The position numbers were made by a program, and so were the translations under genes. Below, piece after piece: positions 10,764 through 14,082 of a stretch of 64,000 nt of DNA (position 1 is the first letter of the stretch; the number at the start of each line of letters is the position of its first letter). Origin of the DNA: Podarcis muralis (lineage: Eukaryota); contig NC_135659.1 of assembly GCF_964188315.1 (NCBI RefSeq), forward strand, positions 101,122,001-101,186,000, read 5' to 3'. The notes beneath the pieces were generated by a model, which saw only the letters and a program-made list of their open reading frames with translations, did not search any database and was not told where the DNA came from.

Positions 10764-13700
10764 AATCAGGTGCTTAAGGCGCCTGTTCAGATGCTGCAAC
10801 AGGGTGGCCCCCCAACAAGCCCTGGAGCAGCCCGTGGGGCCAGGTGAGCAAGTGGCCCTCCTTTGGGGGACAGAGGAGGGCAGGAATGGGCATGGGGGGC
10901 AGCTAGACAAAAGTGTTGGCATGCAGAGGGCCGTCTCCTTCCAGCAGCCCATGGCGAAGACCATCACCTCTGCTCTGACCTAAATCAGTGACCTGGGCTT
11001 ACTCAACCAGGGCACACTATCAGCAGATCAAACTGTGCACACAGAATAGGCGTGAGGCTTGTGGAAGTATACTACAACTACAGATTTATTAATCATAAAT
11101 CAGGGCAAAGAAACATGTCGTCTCTCTTACTTGTTGTCTCAGAGAGAACAGCAAAAGCAATACACAATGGAAGTTCCCAGCAAGCTGTGCTGGAATGTAA
11201 ACAGACATGTGACACGTAACACTCCCATGTCTGTTCCTTAAGGTGGAATGGAAATGTCAACATCAAGATGCAAAGAGTCAGATGGCTAGATCCGACCCAA
11301 GGTCCATCTGGGCCAGTGGCTAGAAACCCAACCCCTCCCACAGTGACCACCCCGTTTTGTGGGGGCCAATGAAGGAAGCAGGGTGCTGGGCTGGGGGGGG
11401 CAGTTGTCAGCTGGAGGGGCATCTTCCCTGGGGAGCCACATTCTGGGGGAAGGAGGCCGGGATTGGCCCCCAAGGCCTGGGGTGTCTCACCTGTCTAGTA
11501 GGACTTGGAATCCAGGAGAAAACTCTTGGAATAGCCTTGCCAGGGGCTCAGGGACAAACTCACCTCTTCCCATGTCTTTCTCTTTGCAGTTCTGCTGCGG
11601 TTCCGCATCCCTGCCCCAGGGGTGAGTATTGGAGAAAACAAGAGCAGGGAGTGGATCCCTCAGACCTGCCCTCCCCATTGCCTGGGCTATTTTGCCCCCC
11701 ACTCTGCCCTCTCAGATGCAGAGAAGCCCCCACCCCACCCGTCAAGGACTGACAGCCTGACTTTTGTATTTCAGCTGCTGGAGGACGGGCAGCGGTACCT
11801 CCTGGGGGTGATCCAAGAGTGCCAGGCAGCTGAGCTGAGCGGGTTCCGAACCCTGAAGTGCTCCAAGCAGGAGACGGCCCAAGCCATTCTGGTGAGTGAT
11901 GGGTGGTGTGAGGGACCCCCAGGGGGAGGGACGGGGTTTTGCATCCCCCGGAGAGGAGGACTCTGCTGGCATAGGGCATAGGGTGTTAACAGAGAAATCT
12001 GAGGGCTCCCTTGGACAAAAAAACAAGGACCCCAGCCAGGAATACCAGAGCAAAACAGCAGCCAGTAGGCTTGGTCTTTATTGAAGACTGTAGAGACAGG
12101 ACTCCCACCTGCCACCAGGTGCAACAAGATGGAAGCCCCGAACAAAAGAGCCCCCAAACTTTTATTAGCTGCAAATCCCCATGTTACCCCCCCCCAAAAA
12201 AAAACCTACATCACTCATACATCATGGTTACATCATGAAAGGGGAGGTCTGGTGGCAGTAATCTGAGCATCCTGGACACTGCCCCATGGTTCCCCTTGCC
12301 CTCCACCAAACACCCATCAAGTGTAACAAAAAAGATATTTACATTTCCCTGTTTCCCAGCCAAGTCAATCCCACCCTTTTGTCTTCACCTGGGTTTGTTA
12401 GTTCAGGAATGGCTACCTGTCTGGCACTCAGGTATCAGGATGCCAGGGATTATCCCTCAGGCAGAGGGGCTGCTGAGTAGCTGAGCTCACTTGTCTATAT
12501 GAATTTCTGACGTTTTCCCTGTGAACCAGTATATAGATACATTTATCAGTGAATTCTTACATTTGGTATCGTGCAACAAAGGCCCTTTGAGTAGATAGGA
12601 AGAAGCTGTGTTTTGTGGGGACAAATCACAAAAGTGATTGTGCTGATTTTGATAGCGGGCTGCATGTACATGATATCTGCTGGTGGGGCAACCCCCCCCC
12701 CCAACCTATACATAAATTCCTGCAACAAGGGCAGGAAAGCCAAGCCTGGCCTTGGGGGTCGGAGCCGTCCTCTGGAGGCCCCCTGAAAGAGCTGGACTTC
12801 CTCCTCTGTTCTCTTCCAGGGCATCTTTGGCCACCTGGAGCGCTTCAGGGATCGCCCCCTGAGCCTGGCTCTGGACTTGGTGGCCCTCATCCAGCTGAGG
12901 TGAGTGGGGTCCCTGGGATGGATGGGGTTGTGGGGGGTGGGGGGCAGAACTCCAGGGGGAGCTCAGGGTGGGGAAGAGCAGGCAGGAGGGAGAAGGGGGC
13001 AAGGGAGACTGGGAGGGGGCAGAGTTTAACTCCTTTCCTTCATCTCTGCAGCATCATGAGATGATCAGTGCCATCCTCCACGGGACCCGGGAGGCTGTTA
13101 TTGGGGGCCCACAATAGGAGGACAGAGAGGTATGTCCTTGGTCTGGACTTCCCTTCGCACAGCTTTCCTCTTCACACACATGCAGAATCTAACCCAGCAC
13201 TCAACTTCTTTTCTCTCTTTTCCCGCAGGAACTGAAGCGGCACTTCCGGCTCCTGCTGGGGAGTCTCCTGATGGAAGCCCCCAATCCTGGCACCCTCCTC
13301 CAGCTGCTTAGTGTAAGTGTCCCCCCAACTTGCTCGGGGCTCGGGCCCTTGAGCCTGTCCTGCTGCTTTGGCCCCAACTGGCCCCAACTCTTTCCTCCCG
13401 CAGGACCTCTGAGGATACGCCCTTGGCGAAACTGGGGAGGCTCAAACACTAGCGGCTGGCAGCATTTCTCTGCTTCTGGCTGTGGCGCAGAGATTCCCCC
13501 AACTCAGAGTAAGTACCTCGCCTTCTTCTTTTCATTTCTCTGGTTGCTTCCATCCCCGCAAGAGCACATCCCCCAGCAACCTTTATCGCAGATGATGCGC
13601 TGTGTGTCCCTGGGGGCCAGGATGAGGCCAGAGGCTTTTCCTGCCCCCTTTCCTGCTGCTGCTGCTGCCCGGGGAGGTCCTCTGGGACAAGGGATTGGGC

Positions 13701-14082
13701 CCATGGCAGAGGGAGGCCCGTCCTCCCTGGCTTGGGGCTGCTTCTGTGCTCTCTTGCACCCATTCAGGGTGGATTTCGTAGTATCATCTGACCCGGATTT
13801 TTCTTTGCGGGTGACAGTAATTCGGCCAGACCTGGTCTGCTTCCGGCAGAGACCCAAAGAAGGTAAGCCCCACACCTTGGAGACGGAGAACTCCCTTGTC
13901 CCTTGTTTCCCTGCCTCCCAGGTTTTCTTGCTGGGAGCCCTGCAGGACCTGCTCCCACCTGGCCGGGGAGGGCAGCGCCCGGACCGACTCTCATTTCCAT
14001 TCTCTTCCATCCAGATGACATCATCCTTGAAGACTTGTAGTCAGGGCAGACCTCTTGCAGAAGGCGTTACAGAAAAATCGAG
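10764..14082 (+). pseudogene. Decayed multi-exon gene, tentatively MROH (maestro HEAT-like repeat) family. Exons 10764-10843, 11590-11621, 11775-11891, 12820-12899, 13052-13129, 13229-13312, 13404-13508, 13768-13862, 14015-14082
   Basis: Nine segments bounded by pyrimidine-tract AG acceptors and GT donors (gtgagc, gtgagt x3, gtatgt, gtaagt x2, gtaagc, gtgcga), mostly phase-compatible, encoding a leucine-rich helical peptide. In-frame stops at 13115, 13410 and 14038, plus a phase break at 12899/13052. The exon structure is well supported; the family call is pattern recall only. Confidence 0.6.
11984..12727 (-). mobile_element. Solo LTR (744 bp, TG...CA) with 4-bp TSD AGGG
   Basis: Begins TGTTA and ends CAACA; AGGG at 11980-11983 and 12728-12731; AATAAA on the minus strand; second copy at 54180-55295. 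Confidence 0.75.

What the first reader, a model, noticed from the sequence alone, without database searches (positions are those of the whole stretch)
10764..14082. Hidden decayed multi-exon gene (MROH/HEAT-like?) between ZSWIM3 and ZSWIM1
Seen: nine small plus-strand exons with strong splice signals that the ORF track cannot show. They join into IRCLRRLFRCCNRVAPQQALEQPVGP-V-LLRFRIPAPG-LLEDGQRYLLGVIQECQAAELSGFRTLKCSKQETAQAIL-GIFGHLERFRDRPLSLALDLVALIQL / HHEMISAILHGTREAVIGGPQ*EDRE-ELKRHFRLLLGSLLMEAPNPGTLLQLLS-DL*GYALGETGEAQTLAAGSISLLLAVAQRFPQLR ... VDFVVSSDPDFSLRVTVIRPDLVCFRQRPKE-DDIILEDL*SGQ. Most junction phases match, but there are three in-frame stops (TAG 13115, TGA 13410, TAG 14038) and a phase break at 12899/13052. 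Known: ZSWIM3 and ZSWIM1 are direct neighbours in human, with no such gene between them. Inference: the small exons and amphipathic leucine-rich helices resemble the MROH genes that are expanded in sauropsids. It would be a lineage-specific insertion, or a gene lost in mammals, that has recently pseudogenised here.
Basis: partly seen in the sequence, partly recalled or inferred. Interest (0 to 1): 0.75.

Follow-up and report, generated by a model that had tools for sequence, protein, structure and literature searches.

The report
Dead copy of lizard HEAT-repeat gene
The small exons between ZSWIM3 and ZSWIM1 are real: they are a broken copy of an unnamed gene family for short HEAT-repeat proteins that has multiplied across lacertid lizard chromosomes, so this locus is an ordinary pseudogene but the family is uncharacterised.

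Summary
Window 8435-14054 (+) is collinear, introns included, with annotated "uncharacterized LOC" genes of Lacerta agilis, Zootoca vivipara and three Podarcis species. These encode proteins of about 200-310 aa.

- **Exons:** Reader exons E1-E7 and E9 match the relatives' coding exons, with the same AG/GT borders.
- **Corrections:** TAG 14038 is the natural stop. A first-exon remnant at about 8506-8588 was missed.
- **Lesions in the window copy:** a 19-nt deletion in E5, which causes the 12899/13052 phase break; TAG 13115; TGA 13410 (CGA in relatives); the E8 acceptor changed from AG to GG; and no usable start codon.
- **RNA:** Reads show splicing at the same junctions, but they carry other letters than the window, so they come from expressed paralogues.
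- **Family:** At least 41 database proteins on many chromosomes, reaching Rhineura and probably Hemicordylus. Intact pairs give dN/dS 0.19-0.49.
- **MROH link:** The guess has real but sub-threshold support. Pfam HEAT_Maestro_2 scores E 4e-4 to 4e-5, below its cut-off. The best structural matches are the MROH5 and MROH7 clusters, at TM 0.62-0.63.

Verdict: a unitary-looking but ordinary pseudogene of a lineage-specific, dispersed, short MROH-like HEAT family. No copy examined elsewhere lies next to ZSWIM genes. Scan note s1-176007 flags a similar "HEAT/MROH-like" remnant on another piece of this genome; I did not check it.

The parts
8435..14054 (+). Whole duplicated gene unit. This stretch is collinear, introns included, with family loci in other lacertids.
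   Evidence: blastn against L002, L003, L004, L005 and L006 gives 70-93% identity in order along the unit.
8506..8588 (+). Remnant of the first coding exon (E0), with donor GT at 8589. An ATG at 8543 runs into TGA at 8555 and is out of phase with the donor. The frame the donor needs has no ATG.
   Evidence: P0004 residues 1-28 map to L003 10001-10084. The DNA alignment is and the three frames. The comparison is with the Lacerta type of N-terminus. N-termini vary in the family, so this lesion is tentative.
10764..10843 (+). E1, encoding (R)IRCLRRLFRCCNRVAPQQALEQPVGP. It is intact.
   Evidence: tblastn with P0004 residues 28-54 gives 78% identity.
10913..11264 (.). Interspersed repeat inserted in intron 1. 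It is absent from the related copies.
   Evidence: There is a gap in collinearity with L005 and L006. Read depth from elsewhere in the genome is high.
11590..11621 (+). E2, encoding (V)LLRFRIPAPG. It is intact.
   Evidence: RNA joints end or start exactly at its borders, at 11589/90 and 11621/22.
11775..11891 (+). E3, 39 codons. It is intact.
   Evidence: Word search gives E 8.9e-7 and 80-83% identity to lacertid proteins. An RNA joint leaves exactly at donor 11891, GT..AG.
11984..12731 (.). Repeat insertions in intron 3.
   Evidence: Missing from the L005, L006 and L003 collinear alignments. Read depth is high and multi-copy.
12820..12899 (+). E4, 26 codons plus 2 nt. It is intact.
13052..13129 (+). 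E5, broken twice. A 19-nt deletion near 13056-13061 shifts the frame. TAG at 13115-13117 replaces AAG/ATG/CAG of the relatives (Lys, Met or Gln), together with a 3-nt deletion.
   Evidence: Alignment to five loci. An RNA contig of run X1 carries the 19 missing letters (table 5c).
13229..13312 (+). E6, 28 codons. It is intact.
   Evidence: An RNA joint arrives exactly at 13229.
13404..13508 (+). E7, with premature TGA at 13410-13412. Relatives have CGA, CAA or AGA there.
13811..13862 (+). True E8. Its acceptor is destroyed: 13809-13810 read GG where relatives have AG. The first codon is GTG instead of ATG.
   Evidence: Contigs of runs X1 and X3 carry A at 13809 and at 13811 (table 3).
14015..14040 (+). 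E9, encoding (D)DIILEDL followed by the family's normal stop, TAG 14038-14040.
   Evidence: Relatives end ...DDIIIEDL* or ...DDIFIEEI* at the same place.

Best explanation
Window 8435-14054 is an unprocessed (intron-containing) pseudogene.

The parent family is lineage-specific and dispersed. It encodes short proteins of about 200-310 aa with three parts:
- a basic, cysteine-rich N-terminal helix (RIRCLRRLF..C);
- an array of paired helices, about 180 aa long, with a HEAT-repeat fold;
- an acidic tail (..EDDIIIEDL).

Shown here:
- The family has multiplied in lacertid lizards by DNA-level duplication of the whole gene with its introns, onto many chromosomes.
- It is also present in Rhineura, and probably in the cordylid Hemicordylus.
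- One such duplicate landed between ZSWIM3 and ZSWIM1.
- Paralogues elsewhere in this species are transcribed from the + sense and spliced at the same junctions.

Inferred:
- The window copy decayed after insertion. It has a frameshift deletion, two nonsense codons, a lost splice acceptor and a disabled first exon, so it can no longer make the protein.
- The family most likely arose from an internal fragment of a maestro heat-like repeat (MROH) gene.
- Intact members act as small protein-binding scaffolds, as HEAT arrays do. A role in the male germ line, as reported for MROH and MRO genes, is my guess from general knowledge and was not tested.
For: Homology:
- E3 alone hits four lacertid proteins at E 8.9e-7 to 5e-5.
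- P0004 is collinear with E1-E9.
- 41 family proteins turn up in five lacertid species, at E down to 1e-156.
- The exhaustive search finds 29 clusters. The farthest are from Rhineura floridana and Hemicordylus capensis.
- DNA collinearity includes the introns.
- Splice borders are identical in six loci.

Lesions.

Copies elsewhere: the five related loci fetched lie at other places and none has a called ZSWIM gene within 10 kb. Two L. agilis copies on different chromosomes share a 7.5-kb unit at 94-97% identity.

Selection: dN/dS is 0.19-0.49 between intact copies. It is 0.60-0.72 between the window and its nearest copies, which are themselves broken.

RNA: joints fall exactly at the E2 acceptor, E2 donor, E3 donor and E6 acceptor. 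All raw-read support for them (1-3 reads a joint) is first-mate-on-minus. The reads carry T where the window has A at 11850, in 3 of 3 and 11 of 11 reads.

MROH link:
- PF23210 HEAT_Maestro_2 hits the same profile region (543-640 of 650) in Lacerta (E 4e-4) and Rhineura (E 3.6e-5) members, 8 of 26 in all.
- The Atlas's own model matches the MROH5 cluster best, at TM 0.64.
- My AF2 model (pLDDT 76, pTM 0.73) matches the MROH5 and MROH7 clusters best, at TM 0.62-0.63 and rmsd 3.2-3.4 over about 190 aa.
- Matches to solved structures are HEAT/TOG arrays, Z 11-12.
Against:
- An X1 contig that is 98.4% identical (13447-13873) has an intact E8 acceptor. Either some lesions are polymorphic or a very close paralogue exists.
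- The first-exon lesion is judged against the Lacerta type of N-terminus, and N-termini vary in the family.
- Every Pfam MROH hit is below the gathering score (19-23 bits against 27).
- Single-sequence phmmer found no long MROH protein.
- Helical repeat folds match one another easily, and Z 11-12 is within the range that one search's own notes call unspecific.
- Function and tissue of expression are untested.
Confidence: 0.88

Rival explanations
1. A live, intact gene whose apparent lesions are assembly or sequencing errors, as the reader's suggestion to resequence the stop codons would imply.
For: Eight of nine acceptors and all donors are canonical. An X1 contig 98.4% alike carries the intact E8 acceptor and ATG. 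Relatives are annotated as protein-coding.
Against: There are five independent lesions of different kinds: a 19-nt deletion, a 3-nt deletion with TAG, a CGA-to-TGA change, an AG-to-GG change, and the loss of a start. No gene is called here in the public gene calls for this assembly. The RNA reads over E3, the only exon with countable reads, carry other letters than the window (11850). dN/dS to the nearest copies is raised to 0.6-0.7.
Confidence: 0.04
2. The pseudogene is still transcribed and works as a non-coding RNA, or as a decoy for its paralogues.
For: Unspliced contigs about 98% alike cover 13276-13461 and 13447-13873 in run X1, which is guessed to be RNA. The promoter-proximal part of the unit is retained (8435-8588).
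Against: No read could be assigned to this copy. The spliced reads carry paralogue-specific letters, and exon depth is 0-7 in two RNA runs. X1 may contain DNA. No conservation test was possible.
Confidence: 0.1
3. The family is a HEAT-repeat family unrelated to MROH, either older or newly arisen, and the MROH resemblance is the generic similarity of leucine-rich helical repeats.
For: Pfam hits are below the cut-off. phmmer finds no MROH protein. Language-model neighbours are a mixed bag of HEAT families: Ltn1, Tra1, MMS19 and TANGO6. Matches to solved structures are generic TOG and karyopherin arrays.
Against: PF23210 is the only Pfam family hit by more than two of the 26 members, and always at the same profile region, in both lacertid and Rhineura members. 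MROH5 and MROH7 clusters rank first in two structure searches made with two different models.
Confidence: 0.3
4. A chance array of splice-like signals, with no gene.
For: None after testing. Single exons hit no Pfam family, and E3 alone found nothing in the Atlas.
Against: The homology to 41 proteins, the collinear introns and the conserved splice borders.
Confidence: 0.01

Closest known systems
Annotated 'uncharacterized protein' genes of lacertids, for example Lacerta agilis LOC117053180 (P0004, 250 aa) and LOC117055943, Zootoca vivipara LOC132592790, Podarcis raffonei LOC128404134, and Podarcis lilfordi hypothetical proteins
   Same: Same exon number, splice borders and reading frames. Exon-level amino-acid identity is 60-83%. 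Introns are collinear.
   Different: The window copy is broken in five ways and lies at a different locus (ZSWIM3-ZSWIM1). None of the five loci examined is next to ZSWIM genes.
Maestro heat-like repeat family (MROH5, MROH7, MROH2B; Pfam PF21047, PF23210, PF23227)
   Same: Predicted HEAT-repeat solenoid. The best structural matches are MROH5 and MROH7 clusters at TM 0.62-0.64. Weak sequence hits fall at the end of PF23210, profile positions 543-640 of 650.
   Different: These proteins are 200-310 aa, against 747-1013 aa for the matched MROH representatives. They carry one fragment-sized array instead of three MROH domains. Scores are below Pfam's cut-off. The basic Cys-rich N-terminus and the acidic tail are the family's own.
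TOG domains and other six-repeat HEAT modules (for example Stu2 TOG1 4ffb, CLASP2 TOG1 5nr4, Spiral2 8y9r)
   Same: Similar size and arrangement of paired helices: Z 11-12, rmsd 3.1-4.3 over 154-179 residues.
   Different: Sequence identity is 8-13%. Z is in the range that helical repeats reach without kinship. There is no evidence of tubulin binding.

Membership tests
Lacertoid short HEAT-protein family (LOC117053180-like) | Significant sequence similarity of the coding exons | tested here: met
   E3 alone gives E 8.9e-7. tblastn of all 41 proteins hits E1-E9 of the window.
Lacertoid short HEAT-protein family (LOC117053180-like) | Same exon-intron structure and phases | tested here: met
   Six-locus exon alignments show identical AG/GT borders, apart from the mutated E8 acceptor of the window.
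Lacertoid short HEAT-protein family (LOC117053180-like) | Intact open reading frame (a functional member) | tested here: not met
   19-nt deletion, TAG 13115, TGA 13410, E8 acceptor GG, and no in-phase start. It is a member only as a pseudogene.
MROH (maestro heat-like repeat) family | Pfam MROH domain above the gathering score (PF21047, PF23210 or PF23227) | tested here: not met
   Only PF23210 is hit, at 19.1-22.7 bits against a cut-off of 27, in relatives P0004, P0001 and P0050. The window's single exons hit nothing.
MROH (maestro heat-like repeat) family | HEAT-repeat solenoid fold closest to MROH models | tested here: met
   This holds for the relative P0004, not for the broken window copy. 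MROH5 and MROH7 clusters rank first at TM 0.62-0.64.
MROH (maestro heat-like repeat) family | Long multi-domain architecture (HEAT_Maestro + HEAT_Maestro_2 + HEAT_MROH2B_C) | tested here: not met
   Family proteins are 200-310 aa with one array. The matched MROH representatives are 747-1013 aa.
MROH (maestro heat-like repeat) family | Descent from an MROH gene (phylogeny, shared intron positions) | not testable with these tools
Single-sequence phmmer did not reach one.

The most novel reading that the evidence does not exclude
The family is an undescribed birth-and-death gene family of Laterata lizards. A fragment of an MROH gene became a stand-alone short HEAT protein with a possibly lipid-anchored N-terminus. 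It then spread by DNA duplication to many chromosomes and turns over quickly: several annotated copies are already broken. That pattern is typical of reproductive or conflict-driven genes. The ZSWIM3-ZSWIM1 copy would be one dated casualty of this turnover.
Probability: 0.3. Interest if true: 0.55.

Novelty: new member of a known kind. Interest (0 to 1): 0.35.

Why it matters
- **This locus:** The puzzle is solved as an ordinary pseudogene. The ZSWIM3-ZSWIM1 interval of this lizard carries a dead duplicate, not a lost vertebrate gene.
- **The family:** The wider value lies here. Dozens of 'uncharacterized LOC' genes in lacertids form one family of short MROH-like HEAT proteins. The family is under moderate purifying selection, is expressed and correctly spliced, is scattered over many chromosomes, and decays often. 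I found no paper that mentions it.
- **Annotation:** The result flags likely errors. At least two database proteins (P0002/P0003 and P0029) come from broken copies.

Tried and rejected
- **Pfam on each exon alone:** no hit even at E 10.
- **ESM Atlas on E3 alone:** nothing usable.
Half of that 'exon' is intron.
- **PDB by sequence,** with a single protein and with the family profile: only noise, E at least 0.5.
- **Foldseek against PDB:** no match below E 0.001.
- **Transposon test:** I looked for a common sharp boundary of the duplicated unit. Homology between copies ends at different places (L002-L005 extends about 400-600 nt further upstream and about 160 nt further downstream than the window's ends). 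The window's ends coincide with later repeat insertions. No terminal repeats were sought further.
- **Same interval in other species:** exact look-ups of ZSWIM1 and SPATA25 returned only this assembly, GCA_964188315.1.
- **The 527-aa ORF at 16849-18432** as a second hidden gene: rejected. It is a (CTT)n array artefact.
- **Literature:** searches for MROH in lizards and for the assembly accession found nothing relevant.
- All searches used contiguous references or database proteins.
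Full report
**Setting**

The window is from assembly GCA_964188315.1, record OZ076958.1, a 102.2-Mb chromosome, at about 101.12 Mb.
- Pfam identifies ZSWIM3 at 1795-3909 (+) and ZSWIM1 at 19606-21135 (+).
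- SPATA25 (22077-22847, -) and NEURL2 follow.
- The public gene calls for this record list nothing from 9606 up to ZSWIM1, the part of the interval that the look-up covered.

**Observation**

I re-derived the nine blocks from the sequence. Each has a polypyrimidine tract with AG in front and GT(A/G)AG behind. With borders corrected by one or two bases, the exons are:

| Exon | Coordinates | State |
|---|---|---|
| E1 | 10764-10843 | intact |
| E2 | 11590-11621 | intact |
| E3 | 11775-11891 | intact |
| E4 | 12820-12899 | intact |
| E5 | 13052-13129 | 19-nt deletion; TAG 13115 |
| E6 | 13229-13312 | intact |
| E7 | 13404-13508 | TGA 13410 |
| E9 | 14015-14040 | intact; natural stop |

Single exons gave nothing in Pfam, and E3 gave nothing in the Atlas.

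I searched contiguous open frames by reference instead.
- The frame 11535-11978, restricted to E3, found four lacertid proteins at E 8.9e-7 to 5e-5 and 80-83% identity.

**What it is**

The 250-aa Lacerta agilis protein LOC117053180 (P0004) reads, block for block, like the window's exons:
...RIRCLRRLFSCCHKVAPQQ.. | VLLRFPIPSAG | LLEEEQLKLL.. | DILRPLEH.. | TMHPKFSSDMLSLILHRT..EEDRE | NLKQHYRLLLGSLL.. | DLRGYALGES..PRLR | MTVIRPDLACFRLKPEE | DDIFIEEI*

With P0004 as query:
- The word search lists 41 proteins, all 'uncharacterized' or 'hypothetical'. They come from L. agilis, Zootoca vivipara, Podarcis muralis, P. raffonei and P. lilfordi. Their contigs have many different chromosome lengths.
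- The exhaustive HMMER search lists 29 clusters at E up to 0.001 and none is a long protein. The farthest are three loci of the worm lizard Rhineura floridana (E 2e-12 to 2e-6) and one of the cordylid Hemicordylus capensis (E 1.6e-4).

I fetched five family loci.
- None has a called ZSWIM gene within 10 kb. One lies next to PPDPFL.
- All five align to the window in order from about 8435-8554 to about 13966-14054, introns included, at 70-93% identity.
- The window's introns carry extra repeats at 10913-11264 and 11984-12731.
- Two L. agilis copies on different chromosomes share a 7.5-kb unit at 94-97% identity. Spread is therefore by duplication of the whole gene as DNA.
- I found no common sharp ends that would point to a transposon.

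**Lesions of the window copy**

These come from the exon-by-exon six-locus alignment.
1. E5 lacks 19 nt that all five relatives have. An RNA contig of run X1 carries just these letters between 11891 and 13061 (table 5c).
2. TAG at 13115 stands where relatives have AAG, ATG or CAG, next to a 3-nt deletion.
3. TGA at 13410 stands where relatives have CGA, CAA or AGA. It is a CpG-type change.
4. The E8 acceptor reads gcGG|GTG where all relatives read gcAG|ATG or gcAG|AAC.
5. The first coding exon of the Lacerta genes maps to about 8506-8588. Its 3' half and donor are kept. The ATG at 8543 runs into TGA at 8555 and is out of phase with the donor, and the phase the donor needs has no ATG. The alternative start used by some members, by read-through of the E1 acceptor, has none either. 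N-termini vary in the family, so I rate this lesion as tentative.

TAG 14038 is the normal stop: relatives end ..IIEDL* or ..FIEEI* at the same codon.

**RNA**

Four runs were laid on 10420-14250. Most depth comes from repeats elsewhere in the genome.
- Over the exons, depth is 0-7.
- Split reads and contigs place joints exactly at the E2 acceptor (to 11589/90), the E2 donor (from 11621/22), the E3 donor (from 11891, GT..AG) and the E6 acceptor (to 13229).
- The far side of each joint is clipped inside the neighbouring exon.
- All reads covering 11850 carry T against the window's A (3 of 3 and 11 of 11).
- The X1 contig has the full-length E5.
- All raw-read support for these joints (1-3 reads a joint) is first-mate-on-minus, as expected for + strand RNA in the usual stranded libraries.

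So paralogues are expressed and spliced as predicted. No read can be assigned to the window copy.

Two observations stay unresolved. One contig and one read skip E4. An X1 contig 98.4% alike (13447-13873) has the intact E8 acceptor, which means either a very close paralogue or a polymorphism.

**Selection**

I counted exon by exon, with split codons dropped and nothing joined, by the Nei-Gojobori method.
- Intact copies give dN/dS 0.19 (L003-L004), 0.44 and 0.49 (against L006). The family is a real coding family under moderate constraint.
- The window against its nearest copies (L005 and L002, themselves broken in E3) gives 0.72 and 0.60, with dS about 0.16.
- Against Lacerta and Zootoca copies, dS is 0.41-0.48.

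The assembly is therefore from a lizard nearer to Podarcis. The death of this copy is not ancient, but it is not dated.

**Family kinship**

- Pfam gives one recurring hit, PF23210 HEAT_Maestro_2 ('MROH2B-like'), in 8 of 26 members. It always falls at the end of the profile: positions 557-637 in Lacerta (E 4e-4) and 543-640 in Rhineura (E 3.6e-5). Scores are 19-23 bits, below the cut-off of 27.
- The AF2 model of P0004, built from the family alignment A1, has pLDDT 76 and pTM 0.73. It has a disordered N-terminus apart from one helix (25-37), and seven long helices between residues 69 and 218.
- In the ESM Atlas, the nearest models are MROH5 and MROH7 clusters (TM 0.62-0.63, rmsd 3.2-3.4, about 190 residues), ahead of CAND1, EFR3 and DNAAF5.
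- The Atlas's own model gave MROH5 first as well.
- Solved structures give generic HEAT/TOG arrays at Z 11-12 and nothing significant by Foldseek or by sequence.

I read this as a HEAT solenoid that probably derives from an internal MROH fragment, at about 65-70%. It is not a member of the MROH family by Pfam's own threshold or by architecture.

**How it works**

- *Shown:* the window copy cannot encode the protein.
- *Inferred:* it is a dead duplicate with no function. There is a modest chance, about 10%, that it is still transcribed.
- *Inferred for intact members:* a small HEAT scaffold for protein binding. The conserved basic Cys-rich N-terminal helix may be a membrane or lipidation signal, and the tail is acidic. 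A male germ-line role by analogy with MRO and MROH genes is my recollection and was not tested here.

**Novelty**

The relatives are already in public databases as unnamed predictions. I found no paper on them. The locus is a new, dead member of that kind.

Scan note s1-176007 describes a similar 'HEAT/MROH-like' remnant on another piece of this genome. It is probably another copy, and I did not test it.

**Left out**

- I did not build, search or fold a joined spliced model of the window's exons. For the same reason there is no tree that places the window copy.
- The reads tool allowed a single call, so the lesions were not re-checked in DNA runs.

Noticed in passing
window 16849-18432: The 527-aa mechanical ORF upstream of ZSWIM1 is an artefact of a CT-rich array: (CTT)n with a 116-bp higher-order period at 17596-18382, next to a GC-rich stretch. 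It has no Pfam hit and its translation is poly-L/S/F.
   Followed up: yes
L002 (P. lilfordi, P0002/P0003) and L005 (P. raffonei, P0029): These annotated 'proteins' come from copies that are themselves broken in E3. L002 has a 1-nt insertion and L005 has two stop codons. The database models are probably pseudogene artefacts that start or splice around the damage.
   Followed up: partly
window 13447-13873 (run X1 contig): A contig 98.4% identical to the window, introns included, has A at 13809 and at 13811, that is an intact E8 acceptor and ATG. It is either a very recent paralogue or a sign that this lesion is polymorphic in the species.
   Followed up: no
window 11891 -> 13052/13061: One RNA contig (X1) and one read (X24) join the E3 donor directly to E5 and skip the 80-nt E4. 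This would shift the frame. It may be an alternative or aberrant isoform of an expressed paralogue.
   Followed up: no
window 5070-5412, 15026-15368, 16305-16658, 54742-55091: Four copies of a repeat of about 340 bp, SINE-like with a tRNA-like head. It also occurs in every lacertid locus fetched, at 75-94% identity.
   Followed up: partly
window 6291-7343 and 7804-8365 (also 36497-37080, 57179-57860): LINE fragments: a reverse-transcriptase ORF (RVT_1, E 1e-13) and a 3' piece ending in (CAA)n. The latter abuts the 5' end of the pseudogene unit at 8435.
   Followed up: partly
window 10409-10715 and 14066-14250: Both stretches have very high RNA depth (tens to hundreds of reads, 90-95% alike) that comes from repeats elsewhere. 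The AATAAA at about 14141 lies in such a repeat, beyond the end of family homology, so it cannot be taken as this gene's poly(A) signal.
   Followed up: partly
L003 and L004 (Lacerta agilis, two chromosomes): A 7.5-kb unit, from about 950 bp upstream of the start codon to about 470 bp past the stop, is 94-97% identical between two chromosomes. This is a recent inter-chromosomal duplication of an intact family member.
   Followed up: partly
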